Positions 22,730 through 54,983 of a stretch of DNA of 64,000 nucleotides are shown here, piece after piece. The translations under genes were made by a program, and so were the position numbers. Origin of the DNA: Saccostrea cucullata (taxonomy: Eukaryota). The stretch lies in NCBI RefSeq assembly GCF_032062105.1, contig NW_026934212.1, positions 496,001 through 560,000 of the forward strand. Direction: 5' to 3'. How positions within the stretch are numbered: position 1 is the first letter of the stretch; each line of letters starts with the position of its first letter. The notes under the pieces are model-generated. The model was not told the origin of the DNA, searched no databases, and saw only the letters and a list, made by a program, of their open reading frames with translations.

Positions 22730-22810
22730 TTGTAGCCCGACACGGAAGTAAACGAGCAAAAATCCTTTGTGAAGCAAGAAATAGTCCTTGCAGAATTTTA
22801 TACCGTAAGT
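22730..22810 (+). promoter_or_regulatory. Candidate promoter and non-coding exon 1 of GTSF1 paralog A (copy 2)
   Basis: Duplicate of 19460-19540; donor at 22804/22805. Confidence 0.5.
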
Positions 22811-24745: not shown

Positions 24746-26348
24746 TAGGTCACCTGAGTCACTCAGGTGACATATTGCTATCCGTTTTCGTCCGTCGTTG
24801 ATCGATGTCCGTCGTCCATCGTGTGTTAACATTTGAACATTTTCAACTTCTTCTCTGAAACCACTGAAACCAATTTCAACCAAATTTGGTATACAGCATA
24901 TATGGGTAAAGGGGAACAAAAATTATGAATTTTATGATCCCTGCCCCCCTGGGGCCTGAGGGGTGGGGCCAAAACCACTAAAATTAATGAAATCTTTAAA
25001 AATCTTCTTCTTTATTCCTGGACATTAAGCAGGCAAACTGTTGGTGTGCATGTAATGAGCATTGAGTCTTCTACCAAAATTGTGAAATTCATGACCACAG
25101 GGTCAGGGGTTCTTGTGCTAGGGCGGGGCTCTATTGATTATATAGTGAAAATGCATTAAATCTTTGAAAATCTTCTTCTCTGCTCCTGGGTATTAAATAA
25201 ACTAATTAAGTACATAGTTATGATGAGCAAGAGTGCCTCTTCCAAAATTGTGAATTTTATGGCCCCAGGGTCAGGGGTTCTGGTGCTAGGGTGGGGCTCT
25301 ATTGATTTTTAGTGAAAATGCGTTAAATCTTTGAAAATCTTCTTCTCTGCTCCTAGGTATTAAATAAACTAAGTAAGTACATAGTTTGATGAGCAAGAGT
25401 TCCTCTTCCAAAATTGTGAATTTTATGGCCCCAGGGTCAGGGGTTCTGGTGCTAGGGTGGGGCTCTATTGATTATATAGTGAAAATGCATTAAATTTGAA
25501 AATCTTCTTCTCTGCTCCTGGGTACTAAATAAACTAAGTACATAGTTATGATGAGCAAGAGTGTCTCTTCCAAAATTGTGAATTTTATGGCCCCAGGGTC
25601 AGGGGTTCTGGTGTTAGCGCGGGGCTCTATTGATTACATAGTGAAAATTTAATTGATTATATAGTGACAATTCAAAATTGTCTTCTCTGCTTCTGTGTAT
25701 TAAGTAAACTAACTTAGTATAAAGTTATAATGCCTCATTCAAATTTGTGAATTTTATGACCCTTGTTTCAGGGTTTGCCATTTGGTGTAAGGGTGGTGGG
25801 GCTCTTTTGATTATATATTGAAAATACATTCATTCTTTGAAAATCGTTTTCTTTGCTCCTGGGTATTATGCTAATGATCCAAGTTTATATATATTTGATG
25901 AAGTAAGGTGCATCTAGCAAAATGGTTAATTTCCTGCCCCCTGGGTCACCGTCAGGGGTATCAAAGGGGGGGGGTACATAGTCTGAAAATAAATTAATGC
26001 TTTGAAATCTGCTCTTTGGTATTAATCAACCATTTATGATGAAATAAAATTTCTGATAAAATTTCCAAACTTTTGAAATATGTGGCCCCAGGGTCAGTGG
26101 TTCCTTCTGGGTGCACAACTGGTTATAAAGTGGAAGTGCATTTTCTCTTTGCTATTCTGGTCTACCTCTTGGTGTTAAGTAAATAGAGTAAGCATGCCTG
26201 CTTAGTTTTATAATTATGATAATCAATGGTGCCTCTCTCCAAATTTTCAGAATTTCATGGCCTCTGGTTTAAAACAAGAACCAAATTCAATTTTTGGAAA
26301 GTTGTTACATGATACTCAGGTGACCTATAAGGCACGTGGGCCTCTTGT
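24746..26348 (+). mobile_element. Complete Helentron/HINE-type element carrying ~165-bp satellite monomers
   Basis: Inserted in a T-run; subterminal IR GGTCACCTGAG/CTCAGGTGACC; 3' hairpin AGGCACGTGGGCCT followed by CTTGTT. Confidence 0.8.
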
Positions 26349-27317
26349 TTCTTTTTATAACAGCTTGTAATTTTCCATGTATCCGCTTACTCTATAGTTT
26401 GGAGAGGAGAGGGGGGTCAGGTAAACTCAGGGTCTAAAAATCTGTTTTATTGCTGGTGGATATATATTTATTGTCAAAATTTTAAATGAAAGAATTTTTT
26501 TTCAAGCACCCACCCCATTAATATTTTATCAACTTTTGCTTTATTATTTATGCTTATAGACGAACAAGTGATCGAAAGAGGGAAATGTCTCATTATTTTA
26601 GAAATGAATCAATACTCTAGCAATTTTCATTTTGATTTAGATATGTATAATGTTTTGTTCACATTCCATGACTCCAAAACAGGATGGTCTTTGCATCTCC
26701 TTCGATAATTACAGTCCCTTTATTTATGACTACCCAGCTTGTGCACAAATGAATTCAAGTAATACATATAGATATTTTTGTGATAGAGGGATACAGGTTT
26801 TAAGATGTAACCGGAATAAGTCCTATTAAATTTAACAAGATTTTTTTTGACAGATTTATAAGCTTTCAAAGTTTAAAAGCATATTTACTTCCAGTCATAA
26901 AACAGGCTCTACTTGTACAAATAGGAAGATGATGAAAGGCTTATTGTTTTCTCGATAGGGATATAGTGTTATGTCATATGTCGCTGAGATATAAAGAATG
27001 ACCCAGCTTGTTCAATTAAAAACAGCAGGAGTGATTAATAATTAGCGTATTAGAGAGAATCCTCCACTTGAGTTTCTCATTCTTCGTCTCTTGCTGTGAT
27101 AACACAACCACCTGTTTGGAACCACTGTTCCACACCAGTGGTAATCACTAAATCGTGAGATTGTGTCCCACTGTTTATTTTTTTTGTGGATGTAGAAGAG
27201 TTACGGGCTAGGGATTTGTAATTCTATCTCTGTGTGGCAGCTCACTTGTTCAAATTCTCAGTGCTGGTTTTTTTTTGTTCCAGTGAGAGTACAGTCCAGG
27301 ACCAGTGAAGTACAATC

Positions 27318-30300
27318 ATGGCTCAGTATAAAATTCCTGACCCTGAGGAGATGATTCCCTGCCCCTACGACAAGGTTCACATGATTAGGGCCAAAAGGAT
27401 GCAGTACCATCTGATGAAGTGCAGAAAGGTCAGTGTACTGTCACTCAAGCTTTTGACTGTTATGATAATTCTATAAATTTTATCTTAAAATTGGAATTTT
27501 GAAATTACACTTCTTGGGTTATGCTCTGAATTTTAATAATTTATAGGCATTGCTAGAGATACACTTAAATACAGATTCCATAAATACCTTAGATTCATTC
27601 AACTATTCATATCTATAATTATAAGAATAGGCATTTCCATTAACACTTTATTCAGATGAAAAGCTAAAATTACAAATAGATACCATCTAAAATACTAAAA
27701 TTGAATTTTGTGTTACTATAATAATAAAATTTCAAAATACAGCTTTTGAGAAGGATTTTCAACTCTTGGTTATTTTGTCCCTTCAGAACTATGTTGGAAG
27801 CGACTTTGCCACTTGTCCTTTCAATGCCAGGCATGAGATGCCCAAACCAGAGCTTCGTTATCACTTAGCTAACTGTCCTGACAAGGCTGTCATTGAGCCG
27901 ATGCTGGCCTATGGTAAGTCATTATAATCAAAAAGTCCATAAGCATTGGCGTCGGAATCAAATTAAAAGTGGGGGGGCTAAGTGTAAAAAAAAATTTTTT
28001 TTGTACCTCCAAAAAAACCTGACAAGCAAAAAAAAAAAAAGGAAATGTCTATTTCCCAAACACGAAAATCCTATTTCGTGGGGGGGGGGGGGGGGGGGGT
28101 AAGGTTCAAACTCCAGTACCAAAAATTTCCTACCTATACTAAGACGTATCTGTGGAAAGTGGGGGGGGGGGGGCTAAACTTACGAAGATATGTTCAATGT
28201 CTATACTAAGTACATATTTGAAAAAAAAGTGGGGGGGCTAAGCCCCCCGTAGCCCCCCCGGTTCCGACGCCTATGATAAGTGTGCAAATTTTTATTACTG
28301 TAAATAAGTTTCTGTTGAAATCATTCATTTTATAATCAATTTTGTTCCATTTTGTTAGGAATTTAAAGTGTGACTTGTTTAGTTTTGGGGAAATTTTTGC
28401 TCTGAACAATAATACATTAACCTTTTATGTGAGAATGAAAACTCTGAACAAAAATACATTGACCCTATATACAACAGTGAAAACTAAAAATGTGTTTTCT
28501 ATGAATATAGAGTTCGGTAGCCGTAAAATGTCAGGTTAGGTAAAGTACAACTCTTTTGAAAAAAAAAACCACACTCATAATTTACAATTATATGACCCTA
28601 AATATATATATGTACTTGTTCATATAATGATAAAATTGAAAAATATTTGACTAGAATTTGAAAGTTGAACATCTGTGCTTTGTTTTGACAGAGAGCAGTA
28701 AGAGGAATGGAGAGGCGTCCATGTTTAGAGGCTGTACTGATCTACCTGTCTATGATAATGTTGTAATTAACAGTGAGGAAAACTGGGACGATGGTAAATA
28801 CATATCTAACTTTGACAATTAATTCTATCAGAAATATGTATTGAAAGGGAAAGTCATTCTTAATGGCCATAAATCTCTGCTGCCACTTTTACTTCACCCT
28901 AGCCACAGGGAAGTGAACTACAGCGTCGTGCCATAAGTATTCGCGGAAAAATGGCGGACGTGATTTGAGAGTTATCGCGCTTGCAACATAAAAGTCACCC
29001 AAATACAACAAAAACAAAACAAACGCTTACCTTTAGTACTTTGTTAAATGTCCCTTGGATCGTATACATGCCATGATGCGTTTTGGGATGGATTTATAAA
29101 GGTTTTGAATATATTCTATGGTGAAATTCTGCCAAGTGTGCAAAATAACAGCGAACAGCTGATCAGGGGTGGTAATATCTCCGGCGTGATTTTGGATCTG
29201 TCTTTTAATTCTATGCCAACAATTTTCAATGATATTAATGTCCGGACTCTGGGCAGGCCACACCATACCCCAATATTATTTGCACGCTTATATTCCTCTA
29301 CAACACGGGCTCTATGTACCGGAGCATTGTCGTCTTGAAAAACGTAGTTGTTTGCAGGGAAATGTCGGGCAATAACAGGCCACAGGTGGTTGTCAAGGAT
29401 ATTTATATATTTCTCAGCATTAATATTACCTTGTACCTTGCATAGAGTCCCTGGACCATACCAGCTGATGCATCCCCATATCATTACGGAAACTTTTGGT
29501 TTTGAAATCGCATACATGCACTCCGGACGGTACGATTCCTGGGCGGATCTCCAGACGTACACACGATTATTTTATCCTATAACCACTTGAGATTCATCAC
29601 TAAATATGATAGATTTCCAGTTTTGTTCAACAGTCCATCTTCGTTTGAGTAAACACCATGCTAAACGTTTCTTTCTATTTACTTCTTTGACAACCATTCG
29701 TTTTCTCACTACTCGTCTGTAAATTTTGTTATTATGTAAAATCCGCTTGACTGTCCGTTCACTAATTGGTTCACAATAATTTCCATTATTAAAATCAGTT
29801 GTTATGTCCTTCAAAACACTTCCCCGGTTCTTCCTAACCATACGAAGTAATCTTACTTCACCACGTTTTGACACTTTCCTGGGACGTCCCGAATGAGGAG
29901 CTCTTTCCACACATTTTCGCTGATGAAACGTTTTTAAAATTGATCTACATGTAGATTCGGGAATTTTCATAATTCTTGAGATCTCACTGACTTTTTGTCC
30001 GTTTTCTTTCAAATCTATAATCAGCTGTTTTATCTCTAGTGACAGTTCTTTTGATTTTCTACCCATGTTGTTTACAGTCCGTAATATTCGGCAGTCTAAC
30101 TTTAGCAGACGTCAAACATGACATCACGGTAAACTTTGACCTTACGCGGTTTTGGGGATGATGTCAAAATACAAAAAAGCGATTGCATATTGATTTAGAA
30201 CAATTTGAAAAACGCGAAGCGTGAACGTTTTACGACGGCTGCCATTTTTCCGCGAATACTTTTGGCACGACGCTGTAGGTAGTATTATTGTGGATCCATT

Positions 30301-33300
30301 GAGCAGAAATGACAAAATTATTGTTAATTTTTTTTTTCTTTTTTTTTTTGTAATTTTATAACAAGTGTTTTTTCCACCCCTCCACCCATTATTATGTATC
30401 CATTAGATTTACTAGTATTGCTACAAAAGCTATTAGAGGTCCAAAGAGGCATGTTAAAAAACAAACAATGGTGTCCATTTTGATAATTTTCAAATTCTGA
30501 AAGACCTCATGATAATATTTTGTCAGTGCTATCACCATTTGTAATGTTAAGAAGACTTGCTTTGGAATAAATGTGTCAGCTTTGTGAAATAAAATAAAAA
30601 CATAAAAATATACACTTGTTTTAATTTCTACGTACAAGATTTCTCAATCTTCTTGTTTGTTGTTTTACAGAGATTCCTTCTGTGGCCAGGATCGGGGTGG
30701 ATCCACAATTTTTTGCACGTCAGGACCACATGATTATCCCAGGGTACTGTATATTTAACTTGAATGAGAATTTTTGTTTTAATTTCTACATTGTAAAGTT
30801 AATTAAGGTTTAAGACATATTATATTGATGATTTTTTACTATTTCAGTCTGACAAAATCAGAGAAGAGAGAGTTTGCCAAGCAGATGCACATTCCAGCAG
30901 AGGACAGGAAGTATGTGTTTCCTTATGATTTTCCTCTCTGCTAAAAAAGAAGGGGGTACAGTTGACATTGTTTGTCTGTCTACCTGTTTTCGTGATTATA
31001 TCAAGTTCATAACTTTTCAAGAGGGCAAAAATGGAAACATATCAATCAAAAATAGTTTCAAACCTTGAAAATTTTCATATTAACCTAAATTATTTGTTCA
31101 AGTTCAAGGTTATAGTGAAAAAGTGTACAATTTATTTACTATGTCTTCACAAGAAATTTTGAAACTGGAACTATTAAGATTGCTCCTGATCTGCCCCATG
31201 GTTTGCTATGTAAATGAAGAAAAGTAATACCTGTTCCTGCCATATTTTGATCATGGAGAAATACCTGGTCATTTTCTTAAGAACTTTGTAACAAAAACGC
31301 ATCAAAAGTGCATACTTCATACATGCACAATGTATTTATTGCCAGAAAACATGAACTGACCAAAGGTTATTAACTTAAATTCAAGTTGCAGAAAGAATAC
31401 TTAAAATCTGAATTGTAACCAACAATCTAGTTCTGTTCTCTGATTAAAATTTAATTTCACTTTTATAAGGTCGTTTTCTTGAAATAAGTAAATCTGTTTC
31501 TCAAAATTTGCCAAGCATTTCAATGTAAAACCTCTGTGATACCTTATTTTCCGTGTTCAATAACAGATACTTGGCCCACTACAAGGAGGCAGAGGAGCCC
31601 ATTAAGGATGAACAGCCCAAACTCCGCCTCCCAAAGACTGCAGCTCAGACTTATCTCCCTCACCAAAAGAAGCTCGATCAGCATCCATCGGCAGTGTTTG
31701 CATATTCATTATCCATGGCCGGTGTGGGGCGAGGGCTTCCAGGTATCAATGCTACAGAATGGATCAGTTATTAAAACAAGAACATCTTAAGATTGTAAAT
31801 TGCTAAGGCCTACAATATATTTTAAAGTCAAAACTTGACATTTGATATTGTTATATTGACAGCCAGCAGTCAGAATGGAGTAATGAATGGCTCTCAGAAT
31901 GCCCCACCTGGTATGAGTAGAGGGAGGGGGCGTGGGTCCAGCCCCGCGGTGGGGAGGGGAATCAGCGTGACTGAGATGAACGGTGACGTACCTCGCTCTC
32001 TAGGACGGGGAATGACCTACGGTGAGGTTCCCTCCTCGTCCCAGCAGGAAACCCCAGCAGTGAGACCAGCAGAGCCCCAGACTAACAGCCCGGTGTTTAG
32101 CGTGGGGATCGGCAGGGGATACAAAGTGCCTAATGGTTTGTATGCATTATTGATATTCTAACCCACAGGTTATGAATGTTTTTATAGGGTATAATTGAGG
32201 CCTATTCTCAAAAGGAGGCATTGATAAAAATATTTTTTAAAAATCTTATGTTAGTGTCTTTCACAGTATTTGCTATGTAATTCAAGATTACACTGTATTT
32301 TATCAAAACAAATACATACATAGAGAAGAAAAGAAGTTTGTCTTTGAAATCTCTTACTTCATGATGATGCTTTTCAATTGATGAGGAAGATTTTGATTAA
32401 GTTTCAATGTTCTAATTTAAAACCAACATTTACATAGAATTGTTTTTCCAGGAACAATTTCACCTCCATCCTTTGTGGTTCCTACAGTGCCCCAGCAGAA
32501 GAATAATGGTAAGAAATAACTCTCAGTATTATTATATTTTCATGTTACTCTGTAACTAAATGTAACTGGTTCACATGCATTTAACAATGCATTATGTTAC
32601 CCTTAGTATTAGCAATACACTTGGCAATATGGTTGCAATAAGTAGCACAACAACCTCATCACAAGTTTGTAATTTGCAAATGTAAGGGTTGTAGATTTCT
32701 CGTAACATCAGTTATGGTAAATGAATCAAAGATTGCATCCAATTTAAGAGTTGATTGTAAACAGCAAATGAAAGACAAAAATAATTTGATGTGCAAAAAT
32801 AGTCAAATTTAAGATGATAAAGAAGTGATAGAAAATTTTAAAAGCTTTATTTTGAGTAAAAATGAATGAGGAGTTTGAAATGGGATAAAAGTGTTAACAC
32901 TTATTTGTTGGATAGGAAAGGAAAAGGAATCAGACTTGGAATCAGAAGGCTCGCAGGTGATTGAAGATGTGGACAAGAAGCTCAAAAAGATTGAGAAGAA
33001 GTTGAGACAGATAGAGCTTCTGGAGGACAAGGTGGGGGAAGGATACACCTTGACTAAGGAGGAGGTAGGGGTTTGATATGTTGGCTATGGTTAAGTATAT
33101 CCCCTTTTAAGGAGTGTAGTTGATTTTATATCCATGACGTTATTAAATAGATGAACTACTGCTTTGCAATCTGTGTAAGTTTGTTTTACTATGATGCTAA
33201 ATAATGAATGTGAAACATATCTTGGGTTACATTTCAAGATGTACTGTATATCTGAACATGTATAATAATGTACATGTGTACATACATGAATATATTTTTA

Positions 33301-33429
33301 AACAAATGAATCAATGTTGCTTGTTCATCTTGACTTTTAAATATTTTGCAGACTGCAAAGGTGAACATGAAGGAGAGCCTTACAGCAGAGAGGGAGAATC
33401 TACAGGAGAATGCCAGGTTAAACAAGTAA
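27318..33429 (+). CDS. GTSF1: GTSF1/Asterix-like protein, paralog A (about 402 aa): 2 CHHC zinc fingers, acidic Trp motif, GRG-rich region, C-terminal coiled coil
   Basis: Phase-consistent GT-AG exons 27318-27428, 27787-27913, 28692-28793, 30671-30743, 30848-30910, 31567-31742, 31863-32135, 32452-32508, 32916-33064, 33352-33429; CPYDKVH...YHLMKC and CPFNARH...YHLANC; EENWDDE. Confidence 0.9.
27944..28275. mobile_element. hAT-like MITE with 5-bp TSD in an intron of paralog A
   Basis: TIR CATTGGCGTCGGAA / TTCCGACGCCTATG; ATAAG on both sides. Confidence 0.75.
28921..30275 (-). mobile_element. Full-length Tc1-family transposon (1355 bp) in an intron of paralog A, antisense
   Basis: 35-bp TIRs CAGCGTCGTGCCA(T/A)AAGTATTCGCGGAAAAATGGC with 1 mismatch; TA TSD on both sides. 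Confidence 0.95.
29033..30066 (-). pseudogene. Tc1 DD34E transposase with one nonsense codon (29572-29574) and one 1-bp frameshift (about 29270)
   Basis: HTH N-terminus, [39 protein letters not shown]; D-to-E spacing of 34 after repair. Confidence 0.9.
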
Positions 33430-34670
33430 ATGGATAAATGACTAGCAAGGAGGAGAGGATTGTACTGTACATATAGTAGTTACTCAGGATTGTTCTGTAT
33501 ATATAGCTCTTGGATGTGTTGCAGGAACTTTACATCTTTTATTTTATACCCTTTTATATGACTTGTTTTAAGGGGAGTTTTATTTCTATACCCAATGCTC
33601 AGATATAAATTGTACTGATAATACCAAAGTTTTGTAATTCTTTGTACTTTGTACATTGATGTTTGAGGTTTGTCTGAAGATGTTTAAATAATCTTTAATG
33701 TAGGAACTGATTGGGTTTTCTGTTGTCATTCTTCATTTGTTTATTTTTTTAAGCCTATCTAGTATTGTCATTCTTGTGCTTTGTCCATTTAGCACCATAT
33801 GGTACACAAAATTCTTTTTTGTATAGAAATGCATTGTGACTTTTGCCTACTATGATTTTTCAGGGCATTATGATAGGCATGCTAAGTTAAAAAAAAATTT
33901 CTTGTTGAGTGGCCCAGAGAATTTTTAGGGCACAAATAAAAGTAATATCTACACTTGATACATTTCAAAGAACCAAGATGTTTTGAAGATTGAAGATACA
34001 AAATGAGATCTGACAGTGTACTTTCATGTAACTCATAAAGCAATGTCATCAAAATGTATAGACAATTCAGCTGTTTTACCATTACATATGCTGGTGATGA
34101 TAATAAAATTGTTTTGGAAGTTAACATTTTACACTTAACCAAGATGGTTTTATATACTACCATGTATTTTACAGTACTGATGTATTTTAAAGTGCAAGTA
34201 TTGTTTAACATAAAGGAATGAAGATATTGCTTGTTTCTTTTTCTGCTCATTAAATTGTAACATATAATTTGACAGGGACATGAAAATGTTTCAAGAACAT
34301 GTTGATCATGAAGATCATACATGATAATTTTTGCAGTATGCTTTTTCCTCGTGGTAAAAAAAAATGAAAACATTTTTCCTATAGTAAAGGGGGGGGGTTA
34401 CTACTACATGTATCCTATGAAAGAGTATGATGTAAATAACGCAATATACAATTACATAACATAGATAAACGTGTGTAGTACACATTGAAATTTGAAAAGG
34501 TAAACAAAAATCAAGGTCATTTAGTTCTTTAAAGAAAAGTCTTGAAATCACTGAATATGCAGCAGTAATTTAAACAATGAATTTGCCATTTTAGATCAAT
34601 CGAAATATTCCAACTGTTCATCATGTACTGGATATTGGCAGGCAGCATCAGTGTTAATTCATTCATGCAG

Positions 34671-37484: not shown

Positions 37485-40400
37485 ATGGCGCAGTACAAAG
37501 TGCCAGATCCAGACAAAGATGAAGTCTGCCCTTATGACAAATCACACGTGTTTCCAGCCAAAAGGATGCAGTACCATCTCATGAAGTGCAGAAAGGTCAG
37601 AAAATGTATAATGTACCATGCTCGAGAAAATACAATTTATATCAACATCATGAAAATTAGACATAAATTTTTACTATTTCTACATATGGACAAACGTATA
37701 TTTCAGTATTTCAAAGTCATTATTTCTCCACAACCATGCTGCCAATTTTACCACAAAGTGCAATTGACCTGCTGTACTGATTTTTTACATTTTCTCTTGT
37801 AGAACCATAAGGGAAGTAGCTTTGCCACCTGCCCTTTCAATGCTAGACATGAAATGCCTAAACCGGAGCTGCGCTTTCATCTAGAAATTTGTCCAGACAA
37901 GGCAGTGATTGAACCATTGCTGGCTTATGGTAAATCAATGATGTCCTGTTTTATTTTTATAAATGTATGTTGGATTAAAAACAAAACAACAACATAACAA
38001 CAACAAATCCCACTGATGTTGTAAAGACAAGGTTTATGCAGATCACAGCATCTCTTAAAACTGTTAAAAATGGGAAAAGGACTTACAAATTATAATGGGT
38101 TCACAAAAGGCAGAAATATAGTTCCTAAATCTTTGATATTAAGAGTTGTAGGATAGCAAACTTTTAAGAGACACGATCTTGAGACCAGATGGTAATATGG
38201 TCACAATTACCTACTTTCTGTAATTTTTAAAAAAAACAGTTAAATTAGCCTTTTTAGATGCTAAGAATCATTAAACTTTGTCATTTAGTACATGATTATA
38301 CTTTAGAGCAATAAAATTAGCATGTTCAGAAGTAGGCAATTAACTGTTATGCATTTCATCAGAAGAACAATTCTAGATCCCTAAACCTATAGGTTTTCAA
38401 ATTGAATTCTGGCATTACTGTTTAGTTTGAAAACAAACTAATTTCAAAATGTTAAAACTTATTTGCTAATGAAAAGGTTGAACATTGTGCATTGTTTTTA
38501 CAGAGAACAGTAAGAGAAATGGAGAAGAGGGGTCCATGTTTAGAGGCTGTACCGATCTACCTGTGTATGACGACGTCACAATTAACAGTGAGGAAAACTG
38601 GGATGATGGTAAATCTACACAAGTACCACTTGCAATAATATCTGTAAAAAAGTACTTTAAAAAGAGAGAAATCTTCAGTACTTAAAAATTATATCTCTAT
38701 AATTCTTATAGCTGTCAGTCCAGTAAGATTTGAGTTGAAGTTATATACAAGAACATTCAATTTTAAAAACAAAATGGCATGTAATTTTTAAAATCATGAC
38801 TCGTATGTTTGAGTCATAACAGTTGCAATAGTTGTCCAAAGTTGTATATAGGATTTAGTGTAAGAAGCCAAGGCCTATTTATACACTGATGCATTTTTAT
38901 TTGGATTAAAAAAAAAATTGTTTGGTATATGAAGGTATCGATAATTTGAATTTTCAATAATTAGAAAATTCATATATTGAGATATTGGAGTGCAGTTGTT
39001 AGACTATTTATTTTTTTGTTGTTTAACAGAGATTCCTTCTGTGGCCAGGATTGGGGTGGATCCACAATTTTTTGCGCGTCAGGACCACATGATTATTCCA
39101 GGGTAGTGTATTCTTAAATTGAAAATATACATTTGTTATATGAATATAGTGGTATGTTTGTTCATTGCTGATTTTGAATATTTCAGACTGACTAAATCAG
39201 AGAAGAAAAAGTTTGCAAAACAAATGTATGTTCCTGCAGAAGATAGAAGGTATGTGGTATTAATTGTTGTTGGTTCCTTTATAAGAAACATTATCAATGC
39301 TTTGTCTGAGAATATGGAGTAAATGAAAACAAAAGGCCAGTATAAACATGATTATGAATTTACTTTATAACAGATACTGGACACATAACACGGAAACAGG
39401 ACCGCCATTAAAGGATCATGAGCAGTCCAATCTGCGTCTCCCTAAAACAGCGGCCCAGACTTACGTATCGAATCAGGAGAAGTCGCTTCAGCAGCCATTA
39501 GCAGTGTTTGCATATTCGCTATCTATGACGGGTATAGGAAGAGGAATACCAGGTAACTGTATCTAAGGAAGTATTAAAATAGTTCACAGATAAATTAAAA
39601 TAAATTGTTTTGCAAAATTTTTCATGCTGAAAGAGTTATAAATTTAATGCTAGTTTCATCAAGTTTCTTGTAATTTGCCATTTCTGTACAGATAATGGTA
39701 TGAGAAGAGAAGTGGATAAAAGACTAGGTCGCGGCAGAGGGAGGGGCCGTGGCTCCACCCCTGCGGTGGGGAGGGGGACCACTATTGCTGAAACAAATGG
39801 AAGGATGTCCCAGTCCCATGAAAATGGGTTAACTTTTGACAAGGGTGGTCAATTTTCCGCTGTCCAGACAGGAACCCCAGCAGCTGTTAGATCTGAGGGC
39901 CTGAAAAGCACCCCTGAGTTTAGTGTGGGGATTGGGCGAGGATACAGAGGATCTGATGGTAAGCGTGCAATTTATTTTAGATTTCAAAAAAAGAGTTTTG
40001 TCTTTCCTGAATTATTTTCAAAAACTCAAGGAAGAGGAACTGGAAAATAATGCATTCTGAACTTTTGATTATTTCAGGAACAACGTCATCCCCATTCTCC
40101 TCTGTATTAGATGCAATGCCTCAACAAAACAAGAATGGTAAGAAACTATTATTTAATGATATTCAACACATTATTCTGATGATTGTGGATTGTTCAAAGA
40201 TAGAAGAGGTACATGCCATGAAAAAGTTAATTAAAGCAGTCTGTTTTATAAAACTACAGCACAAGAAGACTTGGACAGTTTGAAGGATTTGGACAAAAAG
40301 CTGAAGAGAATTGAGAAGAAGCTGAGACAGATTGAGCTGCTAGAAGAGAAGATGGAGGAGGGGTATACTCTGACAAAAGAGGAGGTAGGAGCAGGTTGAC

Positions 40401-41168
40401 TTGATTGTACAGTCAAACCTTATTATCGTGAACTTAGTGGGGCAAAGAAAATAACTGAGATATATGTCCAAAGATTTGAGATACCGTATAAGTGGAAATA
40501 GTAGTGAGACGCAAATTTAGCGATTTCTCCATAAAAATTAGTATTTTATTCTTAGCGATAAGTAATTTTAGCAATTATAAAATGCTCACTAAAGAAGCTA
40601 TTACAGAATTTAATAAAATGCAATTAAAATTTAGCGATATTCAATAGTAGCAATCTTAACACCCTCGCTAATGATGCCAAAATTATTTCTCGCTAAGAAT
40701 TCTACTTATACAGTATCTAGGGTAAAATACTGAAAGAATAAGTATTAATTTGGACTTCCATATTATTTCAACAAATCCTTGGCGTTCATGATATTGGTGT
40801 TTAACTGTGCACAGCCCCTTAGTGAAACCATATCTGTATCATGTGTAATGAGAAACAAACTTGTGATTTAGTTTACTGAAAATTGTACGCAAGATAGTGC
40901 AACATACAGTATTCATGCATCTACTATGTACAGTATTTTGTTCATATACCTGACAGTTACATTTTAGTTAAGTACACATTAACTGTACAGTATTCAGATC
41001 ACAAACACACACATTTGGTACTGTATGTACACATATACTCTGTATAAATATTCATTTCTCTGATAAAAATTTTCTGATTTTTTATAGGCTGCAAAAGTTG
41101 GCATGAAGACAACTCTGAGAAATGAGAGAGAAGAGCTGCAACGGAAGAACGTGTCAAGAAAAATTTAA
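37485..41168 (+). CDS. GTSF1: GTSF1/Asterix-like protein, paralog B (about 396 aa), same exon structure as A
   Basis: Exons 37485-37595, 37803-37929, 38504-38608, 39030-39102, 39187-39249, 39374-39552, 39692-39958, 40078-40137, 40260-40384, 41088-41168; all phases match A; CPYDKSH...HLMKC and CPFNARH...HLEIC. Confidence 0.9.
40481..40715. mobile_element. Small MITE in the last intron of B, nested in an older CAGTCAAAC-type MITE (about 40408-40809)
   Basis: TACCGTATAAGTGGAAT / ATTCTACTTATACAGTA inverted ends. Confidence 0.5.
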
Positions 41169-41214
41169 TAACTCTGTGCAAGACTGAAAATGACTCCAAT
41201 CTATTATCAGATAA

Positions 41215-41219
<5 letters not shown>

Positions 41220-41251
<32 letters not shown>

Positions 41252-41327
41252 ATTCTGATCACATTTTGTCCGTCGTCCGTCCGTCTGTCCGTCCGTCTGT
41301 CTGTCTGTCCGTCTGTAAACTTTTCAC

Positions 41328-41364
<37 letters not shown>

Positions 41365-43367
41365 TGACCAAACTTGGTACAAAGCATCCTTGGGTGAAGG
41401 GGAATTTAAATTGTTAAAATGAAGGGACATATCCCCTCGCAAGGGGAGATAATCAAGAAAAGACAAAAATAGGGTTGGGTCATTAAAAAATCTTCTTCTC
41501 AAGAACCACTGGGCCAGTAAAGCTGAAACTTATGTGAAAGCATCCTGGGGTAGTGTAGATTCTAAATTGTTCAAATCATGACCCCTGGGGGAAGGGCGGG
41601 GCCACAATGGGGAATCAAAGTTTTATATAGAAATATATAGGAAAAATCTTTGAAAATCTTCTTCTCAAGAACCACTGGGTCAGAAAAGCTGAAACTTATG
41701 TGGAAGCACCCTGGGGTAGTGTAGATACTAAATTGTTCAAATCATGACCCCCGGGGGAAGGGCGGGGCCACAATGGGGTATCAAAGTTTTACATAGAAAT
41801 ATATAGGAAAAATCTTTGAAAATCTTCTTCTCAAGAACCACTGGGCCAGAAAAGCTGAAACTTATGTGGAAGCATCCTGGTATATTGTAGATTCTAAATT
41901 GTTCAAATCATGACCCCCGGGGGAAGGGCGGGGCCACAATGGGGAATCAAAGTTTTATATAGAAATATATAGGAAAAAATCTTTGAAAATCTTCTTCTCA
42001 AGAACCACTGGGCCAGAAAAGCTGAAACTTATGTGGAAGCATCTTGGTATAATGTAGATTCTAAATTGTTCACATCATGACCCCCGGGGGAAGGGCGGGG
42101 CCACAATGGGGAATCAAAGTTTTACATAGAAATATATATTGGAAAAATCTTTGAAAATCTTCTTCTCAAGAACCACTGGGCCAGAAAAGCTGAAACTTAT
42201 GTGGAAGCACCCTGGGGTAGTGTAAATTCTAAATTGTACAAATCATGACCCCCGGGGCAGGGCGGGGCCACAATGGGGAATCAAAGTTTTACATAGAAAT
42301 ATATATTGGAAAAATCGTTGAAAATCTTCTTCTCAAGAACCACTGGGCCAGAAAAGCCGAAACTTATGTGGAAGCATCCTGGTATAATGTAGATTCTAAA
42401 TTGTTCAAATCATGACCCCCGGGAGAAGGGCGGGGCCACAATGGGGAATCAAAGTTTTACATAGAAATATATATTGGAAAAATCATTGAAAATCTTCTTC
42501 TCAAGAACCACTGGGCCAGAAAAGCTATAACTTATGTGGAAGCATCCTGGTATAATGTAGATTCTAAATTGTTAAAATAATGACACCTGGGGGAAGGGTG
42601 GGGCTACAATGGGGAATCAAAGTTTTTTATAGAAATATATAGGAAAAATCTTTGAAAATCTTCTTCTCAAGAACCACTGGGCCAGAAAAGCTGAAACTTA
42701 TGTGGAAGCACGCCTGGGGTAGTGTAGATTCTAAATTGTTCAAATCATGACCCCCGGGGGAAGGGCGGGGCCACAATGGGGTATCAAAGTTTTACATAGA
42801 AATATATAGGAAAAATCTTTGAAAATCTTCTTCTCAAGAACCACTGGGCCAGAAAAGCTGAAACTTATGTGGAAGCATCCTGGTATAATGTAGATTCTAA
42901 ATTGTTCAAATAATGACCCCCGGGCAAAGGGCGGGGCCACAATTTGGAATCAAAGTTTTATATAGAAATATATAGGAAAAAATCTTTGAAAATCTTCTTC
43001 TCAAGAACTACTGGGCCAGAAAAAGTGAAGCTTATATATATAGAAGCATTCTAGGGTAGTGTAAATTCTAAATTATAGGAATCATGACCCCAGGGGGAAG
43101 GCCGGTGCCATTATAGGGAATCAAAGTTTTACATAGAAATATATAGGAAAAATCTTTGAAAATCTTCTTCTCAGGAACCACTGGGCCAAAAAAGCTGAAA
43201 CATATGTGCCCATGGAAGGATCATGGGTTAGTGTAGATTTCAAAATGTCTAAATTATGATCAGTGGGGTAGGGTGGGGATGCATTATGTATAACAAGGGG
43301 GAAATTTGGTAAAGAACAGAATGGTCAAAGCTTCTCAGGTGAGCAATGTGGCCCATGGGCCTCTTGT
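41220..43367 (+). mobile_element. Helentron/HINE-type element with about 11 tandem ~167-bp satellite monomers, about 50 bp after the stop of paralog B
   Basis: AGCTCACCTGAG...CTCAGGTGAGC IR, (CGTC/TGTC)n, monomer anchor AAAATCTTCTTCTCAAGAACCACTGGG, 3' GGCCCATGGGCC-TCTTGT. Confidence 0.88.
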
Positions 43368-50388: not shown

Positions 50389-50513
50389 ATGGCGCAGTAC
50401 AGAGTGTATGATCCTGAGCAGGAGATTCCCTGTCCGTACAACAAATGTGAGATGATACGGGCCAAGCGAATGCCGTACCACCTCATCAGATGCAGGAGGG
50501 TCAGTCAGTTTTA

Positions 50514-50557
<44 letters not shown>

Positions 50558-50624
50558 ATTTTGTCCGGCGTCCGTCTGTCTGTCTGTCTGTCTGTAAACT
50601 TTTCATATTTTCGACTTCTTCTTA

Positions 50625-50655
<31 letters not shown>

Positions 50656-50664
50656 CCACAAAGT

Positions 50665-50699
<35 letters not shown>

Positions 50700-51286
50700 A
50701 AGGAAAGATGAAATCAGGAAAGATGAAACTTATGGAGAAACATCCTCAGGTAGTGTAGATTCAAATTTGTTAAAATCATGACCCCCGGGGGTAGGGCGGG
50801 GCCAAAATGGCCGACCAAAGTTTTACATAGAAATATATAGGAAAATTCTTTAAAAAATCTTCTCAAGAATGACAAAGCCATAATTCATCATATATATATA
50901 TTCAAGCATGCTCAGGTAGTGTAGATTCAAATTTGTTCAAATCATGACCCCTGGGGGTAGGGCGGGGCCAAAATGGCCAACCAAAGTTTTACATAGAAAT
51001 ATAGGAAAATTCTTTAAAAATCTTCTTCTCAAGAATGACAAAGCCATAATTCATCATATTTATATGGAAGCATGCTCAAGTAGTGTAAATTCAAGTTTGT
51101 TCAAATCATGACCCCCGGGGGTAAGGCGGGGCCAAAATGGCCGACCAAAGTTTTCAAAGATATATATAGGAAAATTCTTTAAAAATCATTTTCTAAAAAT
51201 AGCAAATCCATGATTGGTCATGGGACTACTTTTGGATTTAAACTTTACAATGAAAAAACATTTTCTACTTTTTCCTACCCTTAGTG

Positions 51287-51320
<34 letters not shown>

Positions 51321-51468
51321 CATAATTAATGGGGGGGGGGGGGGGTAAAATTAAGTATCAGATACCTTTGTTAAATTGCATCTGAGGTGCATGCTCTCAG
51401 TGTAGCTTTCAGGGCAAAACTTAAACATGACAGATATGGTTCACTTGGTCAAAACTTTCATGAAGTTA

Positions 51469-51511
<43 letters not shown>

Positions 51512-51591
51512 CATTTTGTCCGGCGTCCGTCTGTCCGTCCATCTGTCTGTCCGTCTGTCTGTAAACTTTTCACATTTTCGACTTCTTCTCA

Positions 51592-51622
<31 letters not shown>

Positions 51623-54600
51623 CAACAAAGTATCCTTGGGTGAAGGGGATTTGAGTTTGTTCAAATGAAGGGCCACGCCCTCATCCAAGGGGAGATAATT
51701 GGGAATTAATGAAAATTTGGTGGCATGTTTTAAAAATCTTCTTCTCAAGAACCACTGTGCCAGGAAAGATGAAACTTATGGGGAAACATCTTCAGGTAGT
51801 GTAGATTTAAGTTTGTTCAAATCATGACCCCCGGGGGTAGGGCAGGGCCAAAATGGCCGACCAAAGTTTTACATAGAAATATATAGGAAAATTCTTTAAA
51901 AATCTTCTTCTCAAGAATAGCAAAGCCAGAATTGATCATATTTATTTGGAAGCATCCTCAGGTAGTGTAGATTCAAGTTTGTTCAAATCATGACCCCCAG
52001 GGGTAGGGCGGAGCCAAAATGGCTGACCAAAGTTTTACATAGAAATATATAGGAAAATTCTTTAAAAATCTTCTTCTCAAGAATAGCAAAGCCATAATTC
52101 ATCATATTTATATGGAAGCATCCTCAGGTAGTGAAGATTCAAGTTTGTTCAAATCATGACCCCCAGGGGTAAGGCGGGTTCAAAATGGCCGACCAAAGTT
52201 TTACATAGAAATATTTAGGAAACTTCTTTAAACATCTTCTTCTCAAGAATAGCAAAGCCATAATTCATCATATTTATATGGAAGAATTCTCAGGTAGTGT
52301 AGATTCAAGTTTGTTCAAATCATGGCCCCCAGGGGTATGGCGGGGCCAAAATGGCCGACCAAAGTTTTACATAGAAATGTATAGGAAAATTCTTTAAAAA
52401 TCTTCTTCTCAAGAATAGCAAAGCCATGATTGGTCTTGGGACTACTTTTGGATTTAAGCTTTTCAAGTTTAAACCAATTTTCCTTTTTCCTAGCCACAGT
52501 GCTCAGGTGAGCTATGTGGCCCATGGGCCTCTTGTATATTTCTATGACATACCTCTTTTCAGAAAGTTTAATTAAGGTATATAATTAAGTTGTAATTTTG
52601 CTTGTAGAATCATCCCTGTTCAGAGTATGCTAGTTGTCCCTTGAATGCCACCCATGTGGTGCCAAAACCTGAGCTACGGTACCACCTTGAAAACTGCCCA
52701 GATAAACCACGACTGGAACAGGATATCTCCTTTGGTGAGTATGAAAATTACTGAATAGATTTTTAACTCTTTTGGCAGTATTCTTTAAATTCTTAATAAA
52801 AAAAACCTTCTGTTGGTTGAAATGCCATTTTAGAAATGAATTAAGATATGGGTTTTGAATTTTTCCAGGAATTTTCTTAAATACTGTAAATGTTTATTAT
52901 TTTGATGACTTTTGAAGTTAGCATAGATTTGATTTGGAGCATTTCTAAATTTTCTTATTTATGTGAAAATGTGCAAGACATTTAATTGTATTTGATTTTT
53001 GTGCGATCCACCAAAGCTGCTAAATAGAATACACAGCCAAATGTAATATGCTTACAGTATATATATGTCTTTTTGCACAGCATAAAACTTATTAAATGAT
53101 GGGGGTTTAAGGACACCAAAAAAGAAATTCTACCATGCATGGTTTGAACAGAAATTGTGATTCTTTGGAATTATGACCTCATAGAAACAAGTACATTTAC
53201 AATATATATACATGTACTTGCATCATTTCACAGCATTGATTTATTTACCATTACAAATCTGACAGAATAAATAACTAAGTCATGGAAAAATGGAAATATA
53301 TATTCTCCCTGTTTTATTGCTCTTCATTCTAAAATTGTCTGATTTTTAAATCAGAAGCACAGAAGAGGGAAGGAGGCACCCTGTTCACTGGTTGTACAAA
53401 GTTACCCACATACAGCCAGATAGACTTAAAGATTGAAGATGACTGGGATAAAGGTGGATTACTCATACAGTAGAATTTAATGTTACTGTATTCATCAAAA
53501 AAATTCTGAAAAGAAATGAATAATGGATAAGTACGGGTAAATGTAGATGTAAATGTTTTATTTTAAATACTCTGTTTTAATTTAATTTTACTAACATTGT
53601 ACATGTACTACTTTTTTTCTTGCTTCCAGAAATTCCTCTTCTTCCTCGTATTGGGGTGGATCCAAATATTTTTGCCAAAATGGAAGGAATTCAACTACAA
53701 GGGTAAGTGTTGTGTATACACCATTATGAAATTTAAATTTGCCTGATTTCATTGTAAAAATTTTTAGCAGAGATTATTTTTTTTTCTCAAATTTCTAAAC
53801 TAGGCTTACAACAGCAGAGAAGAAACACATGAAGGCACAGTATGCTCTGCCACAAGAGGAAAGAAGGTACGTATACATATATGTGCAAAGTAAAATTAAA
53901 GTGGATATTGTAGCAATTTTTTAAACCATCTCAATACTGTATTCTGGGAATTTTTTGCTCAATCTTATTTTCGCGGCTTCCGTCCTAAACATATAGATTG
54001 GCAAATTTAAAACTGGGCAAATTCAACAAACGCAGAATAATTTTTAAAAAAGAAATGTGACGTGGCGAATTTAAAACGGGTAATGTTGTTTGAAAGTACA
54101 TAAGGTCATAAATATCACTGGACAAAAATAACCCGTATACGGTACTTATAAAGATAAAGTTGTTTTCTGATTGTCACCAGTAATGGTTGTTATTTTAGGT
54201 ACTTTAAGAATCCAGATAAACCAGAGGAGAAGCCAGTAGCAGGTGCCCCAAAACAGGAGGAGGAGGAGGAAGAAGAACTGAGGATTCCTAACAAAGCCCC
54301 CCAGACCTACGTCCCTAAACCCCAGTCAACCAAACAGCAGCCCCACACTGTGTTCGCCTTCTCCTTATCCTCTACAGGAGTTGGCAGGGGTCAGACAGCA
54401 TCAACGGGGGAACAGCCCTCCATGGAGGGGCAGGGGGTGGGGATGGGAAGAGGAATGGCAGGTGTGGGTCGGGGGATCACAGGGGTGGGCAGAGGAAGGG
54501 CGGAGTCAGTCTGGCTTGGCAGTGAAAAGGTGGACAATTCTTTGAACTTGATTGGGAGAGGACAGAGTATTAGAGGGGGTCATGTGATGAGGGGTAGTGC

Positions 54601-54983
54601 AGGAGGGGGTCAGGTGATGACAGGTAGTGTGGGAAGGTTGATGATGGCAGGGACTGGACGAGGTATTTCCGTGGACAAGCTAGATAAACAAGGTACATTG
54701 GATTATGTTTGTTAAGCTGAGCTTTGTCTTCATTTACATTATGGTACTGCAGTGCCGAATTTGCCCTTCTATTCAGGAAAAAAATAATAAAACTGGAACA
54801 ATATATAAATGTTGAAGATCATACAGTAAATGAAAATGATTAATATTTAAAAATAATCTAAATTTTATTTGTGGGGATTCCATGTATAAGGGGAGAATTG
54901 AATTGAAAACAGTAAGGAGCTTGCTTAAAGCAACTAGTGTGGGAATTAATTATTAGTATGTTTTATTTACCATTTCAGATTGA
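50389..54983 (+). CDS. GTSF1: GTSF1/Asterix-like protein, paralog C (about 323 aa): altered first zinc finger, GRG-repeat tail, no coiled coil
   Basis: Exons 50389-50499, 52608-52734, 53355-53453, 53630-53702, 53804-53866, 54199-54692, 54979-54983 (last exon less certain; the unspliced frame stops at 54715); CPYNKCE...HLIRC and CPLNATH...HLENC; EDDWDKE. Confidence 0.85.
50515..51320 (+). mobile_element. Helentron/HINE-type satellite-carrying element in an intron of C
   Basis: Same termini and ~166-bp monomers as 41220-43367. Confidence 0.85.
51470..52535 (+). mobile_element. Second Helentron/HINE-type element in the same intron of C
   Basis: Same termini, microsatellite and monomers. Confidence 0.85.
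53935..54144. mobile_element. Small MITE in an intron of C
   Basis: TACTGTATTCTGGG / ACCCGTATACGGTA inverted ends. Confidence 0.45.

What the first reader, a model, noticed from the sequence alone, without database searches (positions are those of the whole stretch)
32916..33429. GTSF1 fused to a PYM/eIF2A-type C-terminal helical module (paralog A; same in B at 40260-41168)
Seen: the spliced C-terminus is [48 protein letters not shown] in A and [48 protein letters not shown] in B, well conserved while its neighbours diverge. From memory this matches the KKIxxLxKKLRQIExL...Lx(K/E)EQxxK...LxxELxxL signature at the C-termini of PYM1/WIBG and eIF2A. In PYM that region is linked to 40S association. 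I know of no characterised GTSF1 with this module. Inference: it could couple a PIWI cofactor to ribosomes or translation.
Basis: partly seen in the sequence, partly recalled or inferred. Interest (0 to 1): 0.8.

Follow-up and report, generated by a model that had tools for sequence, protein, structure and literature searches.

The report
GTSF1 with an eIF2A/PYM-type tail
Two neighbouring oyster genes encode the PIWI cofactor GTSF1 with a short helical end-piece otherwise found on the translation proteins eIF2A and PYM. The same fusion occurs in many invertebrates and in amphioxus, is not discussed in any paper my searches found, and may link transposon silencing to the ribosome.

Summary
Window 32916-33064 and 33352-33429 are the last two coding exons of a 10-coding-exon gene (A, 27318-33429). 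Its first two exons are CHHC zinc fingers. One 2086-nt cDNA contig carries all exons in order. Paralog B (37485-41168) equals a 396-aa RefSeq model from Saccostrea cucullata.

The tail is not a generic coiled coil:
- A profile of the two tail exons, run against 1.8 billion proteins, gave 20 hits. They were long GTSF1 proteins of bivalves plus true PYM proteins.
- A profile of 37 GTSF1 tails finds human eIF2A's extreme C-terminus as the only significant sequence among PDB entries (E 1.3e-9).
- Profile-profile comparison with PYM C-termini gives 98.9% probability. Column shuffles abolish the match.
- In the oyster's own genome, the GTSF1 tail and the PYM tail are each other's best non-self hits.

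The fusion is old. It occurs in five mollusc classes, an annelid, a brachiopod, nemerteans and amphioxus. A phase-0 intron sits at the same module position in oyster, brachiopod and amphioxus GTSF1 and in oyster eIF2A.

Ribosome (40S) docking is an inference from human PYM and eIF2A. Drosophila PYM shows no such binding. No paper found links GTSF1 to this module.

The parts
27284..27428 (+). Gene A, first coding exon (ATG at 27318): CHHC zinc finger 1
   Evidence: Pfam zf-U11-48K at E 1.1e-11. cDNA contig L032 bases 47-191 match at 97%.
27787..27913 (+). Gene A coding exon 2: CHHC zinc finger 2
   Evidence: Pfam zf-U11-48K at E 2.2e-10. RNA joint 27912>28691 with GT..AG ends in 4 runs. 100% match to L032.
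28692..28793 (+). Gene A coding exon 3: ends in the family-invariant E-N-W-D acidic/aromatic motif
   Evidence: RNA joints on both sides. E110, N111, W112 and D113 are invariant in alignment A2.
30671..30743 (+).
   Evidence: RNA joint 28792>30670 in 4 runs. Matches L032. Per-exon identity.
30848..30910 (+). Gene A coding exon 5
   Evidence: RNA joints. L032 match at 100%.
31567..31742 (+). Gene A coding exon 6
   Evidence: RNA joints. L032 match at 100%.
31863..32135 (+). Gene A coding exon 7: RG/RGG-rich low-complexity region
   Evidence: Translation. RNA joints. L032 match at 98%.
32452..32508 (+). Gene A coding exon 8
   Evidence: RNA joint 32134>32451. 37 reads continue behind 32508 into an allele of exon 9.
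32916..33064 (+). Gene A coding exon 9: acidic linker, then helix 1 and the Gly turn of the eIF2A-like module
   Evidence: Profile search. eIF2A hits. hhalign. L032 bases 1062-1211 match at 98%. AF2 predicts a helix at tail-model residues 4-36.
33352..33429 (+). Gene A coding exon 10: helix 2 of the module and the stop codon. The 3'UTR runs on to at least 34226.
   Evidence: L032 bases 1210-2086 match 33350-34226. This part was not in the first query, yet it aligns with helix 2 of PYM and eIF2A.
37485..41168 (+). Gene B, paralog with the same 10-exon plan. Exons: 37485-37595, 37803-37929, 38504-38608, 39030-39102, 39187-39249, 39374-39552, 39692-39958, 40078-40137, 40260-40384, 41088-41168.
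   Evidence: Each exon translates to a piece of P0037, RefSeq 'LOC134240159 Saccostrea cucullata', 396 aa. Tail exons are 40260-40384 and 41088-41168.
50389..54691 (+). Gene C, third tandem GTSF1-family paralog without the tail
   Evidence: tblastn of P0189 ('protein D7-like', Saccostrea cucullata, 323 aa) matches five of its six exon pieces at 100% and the sixth at 96%. No tail match.

Best explanation
Genes A and B encode long GTSF1-family proteins of 402 and 396 aa.

Shown here:
- Two N-terminal CHHC zinc fingers.
- The family's invariant acidic Trp motif.
- A 24-aa block that is identical between A and B.
- An RG-rich, poorly conserved middle region.
- A C-terminal unit of about 55-60 aa that is predicted to form two helices joined at an invariant Gly.

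This C-terminal unit is homologous to the 'eIF2A-like domain' at the C-termini of PYM (partner of Y14-Mago) and eIF2A. The fusion is ancient. It is present in Mollusca, Annelida, Brachiopoda, Nemertea and Cephalochordata, and one intron position is conserved. None of the GTSF1 papers my searches retrieved mentions such a tail, and from memory the GTSF1 proteins of flies, nematodes, silkworm and vertebrates lack it.

Inferred mechanism: the zinc fingers and Trp motif do the usual GTSF1 job of binding RNA and activating PIWI. The basic face of the helical unit docks the protein on whatever partner the module binds in PYM and eIF2A, most likely the 40S subunit or 48S complex. That would place PIWI activation on ribosome-associated transcripts.

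My odds: module homology and true fusion about 0.9. That the module's job here is 40S/ribosome docking about 0.4.
For: Architecture: Pfam zf-U11-48K in exons 1 and 2 and twice in every full-length relative tested.

Transcript: cDNA contig L032, RNA joints and the RefSeq model of B.

Homology of the tail:
- hmmsearch with only the A and B exon-9 profile against 1.84e9 proteins gave 20 hits at E<1e-3. These include bivalve long GTSF1 proteins and PYM proteins with Pfam Mago-bind: P0009 at 2.5e-6, P0012 at 1.2e-5 and P0016 at 2e-4.
- A profile of 37 GTSF1 tails against PDB sequences finds human eIF2A residues 541-601 of chain 8dys_A at E 1.3e-9 as the sole significant hit. The PYM profile against eIF2A gives 7.7e-13.
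- hhalign of GTSF1 tails against 14 named PYM C-termini gives probability 97.7-98.9 and scores of 62-85 over 62-64 columns. Column shuffles average 11-12 (maximum 22.8) and the reversed alignment scores 13.3.
- Six-frame search of the 1.17-Gb genome: the tail profile hits A and B, then the oyster's own PYM at E 0.005. The PYM profile hits PYM, then the GTSF1-B tail exon at E 0.0034.
- The PYM-only HMM hits tails of long GTSF1 proteins from many phyla, down to E 2e-8.

Age of the fusion:
- The tail occurs in long GTSF1 proteins of Haliotis, Patella, Liolophura, Acanthosepion, Owenia, Lingula, Tubulanus, Lineus and Branchiostoma.
- A phase-0 intron lies 8 residues after the invariant Gly in oyster A and B, amphioxus, Lingula and oyster eIF2A.

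Structure: AF2 gives mean pLDDT 84.5, with a helix at 4-36, a loop, and helices at 43-68.

Function of the module elsewhere:
- The C-terminus of human PYM, noted as eIF2A-like, associates with 40S/48S (PMC4072592 and PMC10098021, both citing Diem 2007 and Gehring 2009).
- eIF2A binds 40S. Residues 529-556, which by my offset estimate overlap helix 1, restore translational inhibition when joined to the propeller domain (PMC10570035).
Against: - No experiment bears on this protein.
- Drosophila PYM, whose C-terminus is conserved, showed no 40S association. There the domain acts as a regulator of PYM's own activity (PMC4072592, PMC10098021).
- For eIF2A, which terminus binds 40S could not be resolved (PMC10570035).
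- No Pfam model exists for the module. Pfam scans of the tail were blank apart from a chance-level SWIRM-assoc_1 match at E 0.06.
- Foldseek found nothing significant. A two-helix unit is a very simple fold.
- Paralog C, many other CHHC genes in this genome, and the echinoderm long forms returned all lack the tail. It is therefore dispensable for at least some GTSF1 functions.
Confidence: 0.75

Rival explanations
1. The module is truly homologous to the PYM/eIF2A tail, but here it does not bind ribosomes. It could instead act as an intramolecular regulator, as proposed for Drosophila PYM. It could be a dimerisation or packing element like the first helical hairpin of the caprin HR1 domain. It could also be a general RNA-binding basic helix that helps assembly in nuage.
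For: - No ribosome association was found for Drosophila PYM, and its C-terminal 54 residues restrain its activity (PMC4072592).
- The best structural look-alike of the AF2 tail model is the Caprin-2 HR1 domain (8k9c): TM 0.76-0.88 and rmsd 0.7-0.8 A over 56-66 residues, although E is 0.84.
- The PYM profile touches Caprin-2 residues 34-78 at E 0.07.
- The protein also carries RG repeats typical of condensate and Tudor-binding proteins.
Against: In two independent human proteins the module lies in the part tied to 40S/48S association or to 40S-dependent repression (PMC4072592, PMC10570035). Its basic residues are the most conserved positions across all three families. That fits a shared, conserved ligand better than lineage-specific self-regulation.
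Confidence: 0.4
2. The resemblance is only compositional: a Lys/Glu-rich amphipathic helix that matches many coiled coils by chance.
For: - A single-sequence phmmer of exon 9 against PDB sequences ranked designed coiled coils above eIF2A, which reached only E 2.5.
- There is no Pfam family for the tail.
- Foldseek hits are all generic helical hairpins.
Against: - All 20 library-wide hits carry the same two-helix pattern with the Gly turn, and several are Pfam-confirmed PYMs. No myosin-like or other generic coiled coil appears.
- Shuffled and reversed profiles score 11-13 against 62 for the real one.
- eIF2A is the only significant hit among PDB sequences with the 37-sequence profile.
- Helix 2 was not part of the first query, yet it aligns as well.
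- The two modules are reciprocal best hits within a 1.17-Gb genome.
- An intron position is shared with eIF2A.
Confidence: 0.03
3. The tail exons belong to a different gene or to a read-through artefact and are not part of the GTSF1 protein.
For: At 95% identity almost no RNA reads were laid on 32916-33064.
Against: - The missing depth is allelic divergence. 37 reads leave exon 8 into a sequence that encodes the same start of exon 9.
- A single cDNA contig holds the whole ORF at 97-100% identity.
- RefSeq and Logan models in more than 20 species have the same architecture.
Confidence: 0.01

Closest known systems
GTSF1 / Asterix family (PIWI cofactors with two CHHC U11-48K-type zinc fingers)
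   Same: Two N-terminal CHHC fingers (Pfam PF05253 twice) followed by an acidic Trp-containing motif. Sources name relatives 'gametocyte-specific factor 1-like', 'GTSF1' and 'protein D7-like'.
   Different: It is 2-3 times as long as the roughly 160-170-aa studied proteins (a length I give from memory). It also has an RG-rich middle and a C-terminal eIF2A-like helical module. None of the GTSF1 papers retrieved mentions such a module.
C-terminal 'eIF2A-like domain' of PYM (PYM1/WIBG, partner of Y14 and Mago)
   Same: The same colinear pattern of about 55 residues: a basic helix with the KKL-x-QI core, an invariant Gly turn, and a second helix with a conserved Lys. It lies at the extreme C-terminus. 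hhalign probability is 98.9%. The two modules are reciprocal best hits in the oyster genome.
   Different: The N-terminal partner domain is a pair of CHHC zinc fingers instead of the Mago-binding domain. The loop is 2 residues shorter. In the oyster the PYM module is one exon, while the GTSF1 module is split by an intron.
C-terminal helices of eIF2A
   Same: A gapless 50-61-residue alignment to the last residues of human eIF2A at E 1.3e-9. A phase-0 intron lies at the same module position in oyster eIF2A and in oyster, Lingula and amphioxus GTSF1. NCBI's pipeline even named one oyster long GTSF1 protein 'eukaryotic translation initiation factor 2A'.
   Different: There is no beta-propeller (Pfam eIF2A domain). 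Oyster eIF2A has a second intron in the module that GTSF1 lacks.
Caprin HR1 domain, first helical hairpin
   Same: Best structural match of the AF2 tail model (8k9c, TM 0.76-0.88). There is a borderline sequence match of the PYM profile to Caprin-2 residues 34-78 at E 0.07.
   Different: The match is not significant by either measure. The GTSF1 tail profile alone does not reach it at E<=1. In caprin the hairpin is part of a larger dimeric domain.

Membership tests
GTSF1 / Asterix family | Two tandem CHHC (U11-48K-type) zinc fingers at the N-terminus | tested here: met
   PF05253 in exon 1 (E 1.1e-11) and exon 2 (E 2.2e-10). Two stretches in P0001, P0004, P0005, P0007 and P0014.
GTSF1 / Asterix family | Acidic, aromatic (Trp) motif downstream of the fingers. 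From memory, this is the motif implicated in PIWI binding in mouse and silkworm. | tested here: met
   E-N-W-D is invariant across 7 long family members and is present at the end of A exon 3 and B exon 3. Its equivalence to the PIWI-binding motif is my inference.
GTSF1 / Asterix family | Binds a PIWI protein and stimulates target cleavage or silencing | not testable with these tools
   This needs co-IP and slicing assays.
eIF2A-like C-terminal module (PYM / eIF2A) | Significant, colinear sequence-profile similarity to the C-termini of PYM and eIF2A | tested here: met
   Controls.
eIF2A-like C-terminal module (PYM / eIF2A) | Located at the extreme C-terminus as a helix, Gly turn, helix unit | tested here: met
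   The module ends 8 residues before the stop in A. AF2 gives helices at 4-36 and 43-68 with mean pLDDT 84.5.
eIF2A-like C-terminal module (PYM / eIF2A) | Mediates association with the 40S subunit / 48S complex | not testable with these tools
   Reported for human PYM and not seen for Drosophila PYM (PMC4072592, PMC10098021). Nothing is known for GTSF1.
PYM (partner of Y14 and Mago) | N-terminal Mago-binding domain (PF09282) | tested here: not met
   No Mago-bind match in the A exons or in long GTSF1 proteins. The oyster's real PYM lies elsewhere, on C20832 and C5931. The protein is therefore not a PYM.
eIF2A | N-terminal nine-bladed beta-propeller (PF08662) | tested here: not met
   No eIF2A-domain match in A or its relatives. 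The oyster's eIF2A gene is on C5726. The protein is therefore not an eIF2A, despite one NCBI name.

The most novel reading that the evidence does not exclude
The ancestral bilaterian GTSF1 was a ribosome-tethered PIWI cofactor. Its eIF2A-like tail docks on the 40S subunit, so that PIWI slicing, or piRNA precursor processing, is activated on scanning or translating transcripts. The tail, which by its shared intron was probably acquired from an eIF2A-like gene, would then have been lost independently in the lineages where GTSF1 has been studied (insects, nematodes, vertebrates). That would explain why the link has gone unnoticed.
Probability: 0.25. Interest if true: 0.85.

Novelty: new variant of a known kind. 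Interest (0 to 1): 0.62.

Why it matters
As far as I know, GTSF1 has been studied only in animals whose proteins lack this tail (flies, silkworm, nematodes, mouse). In those animals it acts as a small PIWI-activating cofactor. This work shows that across much of animal diversity, and probably ancestrally, GTSF1-family proteins also carry RG repeats and the module that human PYM uses to sit on the 40S subunit.

If the module keeps that activity, it would be a direct physical link between piRNA-guided cleavage and the translation machinery. That makes the link testable with simple tail-deletion and co-sedimentation experiments.

The finding also makes GTSF1 a third carrier of the little-studied 'eIF2A-like domain', alongside PYM and eIF2A. 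Protist proteins with tandem copies add further carriers, and caprin HR1 may be a distant relative. The 37-sequence alignment here could seed a family model, since no model in the Pfam copy searched here matched the tail.

Tried and rejected
- Pfam scan of each exon. The tail gave nothing except a chance-level SWIRM-assoc_1 match at E 0.06.
- Single-sequence phmmer of exon 9 against PDB sequences. Designed coiled coils outranked eIF2A (E 2.5), so one sequence alone is inconclusive. Profiles were needed.
- Word-index search with the tail region of P0001. It found only two Saccostrea proteins.
- My first splice model used a downstream AG for the exon at 30848. I rejected it when RNA joints revealed the extra exon 30671-30743 and use of the first AG.
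- Regex search for an eIF2A C-terminal exon near the propeller exons. It failed because the module is split into three exons. An unfiltered HMM scan then found it.
- Hit C10009:144813 (L019) is a Lys/Glu-rich stretch in front of a WW-like domain. I take it as a false positive.
- Foldseek of the AF2 tail model against PDB structures. Nothing was significant.
- The search of earlier findings returned nothing for this place.
- Literature searches pairing GTSF1 with PYM, eIF2A or oyster found no paper on this architecture.
- No search was run with a joined spliced model. All searches used single exons by reference or public proteins returned by searches (P0160, P0037). In one search exon coordinates were concatenated inside a script, only to count length and stop codons.
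Full report
**What is at the coordinates**

The window is low-GC, intron-rich animal DNA. The stretch 32916-33429 holds two short exons on the + strand:
- 32916-33064 has an AG acceptor, a GT donor and ends in phase 0.
- 33352-33429 has an AG acceptor and a TAA stop.

The B copy at 40260-40384 and 41088-41168 does the same.

**Gene models**

Upstream of the A tail lie two exons that each match Pfam zf-U11-48K, the CHHC finger (E 1.1e-11 and 2.2e-10). A-versus-B DNA comparison and RNA evidence fix a model of 10 coding exons for A:
- 27318-27428
- 27787-27913
- 28692-28793
- 30671-30743
- 30848-30910
- 31567-31742
- 31863-32135
- 32452-32508
- 32916-33064
- 33352-33429

All have canonical AG/GT sites and together make 1209 nt, or 402 codons plus the stop. 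I first guessed a wrong acceptor for the next exon and corrected it from the RNA joints.

RNA evidence for gene A:
- RNA-seq contigs and raw reads from four runs give GT..AG joints for exons 2-3, 3-4, 6-7 and 7-8.
- The joints for exons 4-5 and 5-6 are offset by one base in those runs, which I read as SNPs. The cDNA contig below matches the canonical junctions at 100%.
- All laid reads were only 95-99% identical to the reference. Exon 9 fell below the 95% cut-off in those individuals.
- Even so, 37 reads leave exon 8 at 32508 into a sequence that encodes the same first residues of exon 9.
- A Logan cDNA contig, L032 (2086 nt), has an uninterrupted 402-aa ORF (P0160). It is colinear with a 46-nt 5'UTR exon, all ten coding exons and about 800 nt of 3'UTR at 97-100% identity. 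This includes the 33064|33352 joint.

Every exon of B translates to a piece of P0037, a 396-aa RefSeq protein of Saccostrea cucullata. A third tandem paralog, C (50389-54691), matches P0189 ('protein D7-like' of the same species) at 96-100% per exon piece and has no tail. The tail is therefore spliced to the CHHC exons, and the organism is a Saccostrea oyster.

**Is the tail conserved beyond its neighbours?**

Between A and B the module is 37/48 identical (77%). The two preceding exons are 42% and 50% identical.

**Is it a PYM/eIF2A-type module or just a charged helix?**

- A profile made only from the two exon-9 peptides was run by HMMER against 1.84 billion representative proteins. Only 20 proteins scored E<1e-3.
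- They are long GTSF1 proteins of oysters, scallop and mussels, a few fragments, and proteins that carry one or two copies of the same two-helix unit.
- The PYMs among them (P0009, P0012 and P0016, scanned) have a Pfam Mago-binding domain, so they are true PYMs. P0017 and P0019 show the same N-terminal motif by eye. No generic coiled-coil protein appeared.
- I then built an independent alignment of 14 source-named PYM C-termini, including the oyster's own PYM.
- hhalign between six bivalve GTSF1 tails and this PYM set gave 97.7% probability and a score of 61.9 over 62 columns.
- In 400 column shuffles the mean score was 11-12 and the maximum 22.8. The reversed alignment scored 13.3.
- With 37 tails from many phyla, the probability rose to 98.9%.
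- The same 37-tail profile contains no PYM or eIF2A sequence. It finds the last 61 residues of human eIF2A (8dys_A) as the only significant sequence among PDB entries (E 1.3e-9). The accepted PYM-eIF2A similarity scores 7.7e-13 in the same test.
- In six-frame searches of the oyster's 1.17-Gb assembly, the tail profile hits A and B and then the oyster PYM (E 0.005). The PYM profile hits PYM and then the GTSF1-B tail exon (E 0.0034).
- Helix 2 is encoded by the last exon and was not in the first query. It nevertheless aligns with helix 2 of PYM and eIF2A.
- The oyster's eIF2A also has the module, split over three exons on contig C5726.

**Distribution and age**

A profile search with full-length long forms returned 84 CHHC proteins. 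Scanning them with both the tail HMM and the PYM-only HMM shows the tail in these groups:
- Bivalves: oysters, pearl oyster, mussels, scallops, unionids and a partial match in Solemya.
- Gastropods: Haliotis, Patella, Bradybaena.
- A chiton (Liolophura) and a cuttlefish (Acanthosepion).
- The annelid Owenia and the brachiopod Lingula.
- Two nemerteans (Tubulanus, Lineus).
- Amphioxus, where the protein is annotated 'GTSF1'.

The sea-urchin and brittle-star long forms in the list, and several paralogs, lack it.

The GTSF1 module carries a phase-0 intron exactly 8 residues after the invariant Gly. This holds in oyster A and B, in amphioxus and in Lingula. Oyster eIF2A has a phase-0 intron at the same place, whereas oyster PYM's module is a single exon.

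With about 165 possible site-and-phase combinations and two eIF2A introns, a chance coincidence has odds of roughly 1%. I read this as one ancient fusion that predates the protostome-deuterostome split. The donor was probably eIF2A-like. The donor assignment is inference.

**Structure**

AlphaFold2 on the 37-tail alignment gives a confident model with mean pLDDT 84.5. It has a long helix at residues 4-36, a loop at the Gly, and helices at 43-68. Foldseek against PDB structures found nothing significant. The top match was the Caprin-2 HR1 domain (TM 0.76-0.88, E 0.84). The PYM profile also touches that domain at E 0.07. This is a lead, not a finding.

**What the module does elsewhere**

- In Drosophila no ribosome association was detected, and the C-terminal 54 residues restrain PYM's activity (PMC4072592, PMC10098021).
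- Recombinant eIF2A binds 40S and represses translation. Residues 529-556 restore inhibition when joined to the propeller. By my offset estimate (8dys chain numbering minus 18) they overlap helix 1. Which terminus binds 40S was not resolved (PMC10570035).

**Most likely working**

Shown:
- It is a GTSF1-family protein with an added eIF2A-like helical unit.
- It is transcribed and spliced as one mRNA.
- It is conserved over large evolutionary distances.

Inferred:
- The CHHC fingers and the Trp motif act as in other GTSF1 proteins, in RNA binding and PIWI activation.
- The RG repeats offer methyl-arginine or Tudor docking sites, or RNA contacts.
- The tail's conserved basic face docks on the module's conserved partner, most likely the small ribosomal subunit.

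I put homology and fusion at about 0.9 and ribosome docking at about 0.4. The main rival, also at about 0.4, is a regulatory or dimerising role.

**Novelty**

The proteins sit in public annotation as 'uncharacterized', 'GTSF1-like' or 'protein D7-like'. One is even named 'eukaryotic translation initiation factor 2A' and another 'translation initiation factor IF-2-like'. I found no paper that links GTSF1 to this module, and no Pfam model matched the tail. It is a new domain architecture of a known family.

No search used a joined spliced model. Exons were searched one by one by reference, and full-length comparisons used database proteins returned by the searches.

Noticed in passing
window 50389-54691 (+): A third tandem GTSF1-family gene (C). 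It matches P0189 'protein D7-like' of Saccostrea cucullata (323 aa) at 96-100% per exon piece. It has CHHC fingers and RG repeats but no eIF2A-like tail, and it ends shortly after a 'VDKLDK' stretch that may be a remnant of the start of the tail.
   Followed up: partly
window 30671-30743 and 39030-39102: Coding exon 4 encodes a 24-aa block ([12 protein letters not shown]...MIIPG). It is 100% identical between A and B, more conserved than the zinc fingers, and holds family-invariant residues (I116, D125, G139). Its function is unknown, and no Pfam match was found.
   Followed up: partly
window 31863-32135, 39692-39958, 54197-54691: The middle of all three paralogs is rich in G-R-G / RGG repeats, as are relatives in other phyla. 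These look like methyl-arginine sites for Tudor-domain docking.
   Followed up: no
window 29033-30066 (-), inside intron 3 of gene A: Broken Tc1/mariner-type transposase ORFs. RNA contigs at low, even depth cover 28957-30277, probably from other copies.
   Followed up: no
window about 24800-25700 and 41200-42500: Tandem repeats of about 165 bp, each with the same short ORF, flank the genes. They are probably a satellite or a MITE array.
   Followed up: no
window 19489-19534 and 22759-22804: The 46-nt 5'UTR exon of the gene A cDNA matches two places equally well (97.8%). The leader exon, and possibly the promoter region, is therefore duplicated upstream.
   Followed up: no
window 27700-33500, RNA runs X1, X2, X4, X15: All laid reads are 95-99% identical and none reaches 99% or more. 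Exon 9 differs by more than 5% in those animals, and two exon junctions carry synonymous SNPs. The sequenced individuals are a diverged population or lineage relative to the reference.
   Followed up: partly
L036 = G000:C17608:77802-80858, match at contig 79302-79358: Another oyster gene begins with Met followed directly by helix 1 and the turn of the same module (EIRKLRKKLRQIENLERKEG...), then a splice donor. It may be a fourth carrier of the module in this genome.
   Followed up: partly
P0006, P0009-P0012, P0015, P0017-P0020 (metagenome/transcriptome proteins): Protist-like PYMs and other proteins carry two tandem copies of the module. P0015 (585 aa) and P0010 have no Pfam domain match that passes threshold. 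The module behaves as a mobile unit.
   Followed up: partly
own genome: At least 32 CHHC-finger exons lie on many contigs, so the GTSF1 family is strongly expanded in this oyster. Only A and B have the tail.
   Followed up: no
PDB 8k9c (Caprin-2 HR1), residues 34-78: The first hairpin of the caprin HR1 domain is the best structural match of the tail model and a borderline sequence match of the PYM profile (E 0.07). It may be a distant relative of the eIF2A-like module.
   Followed up: partly
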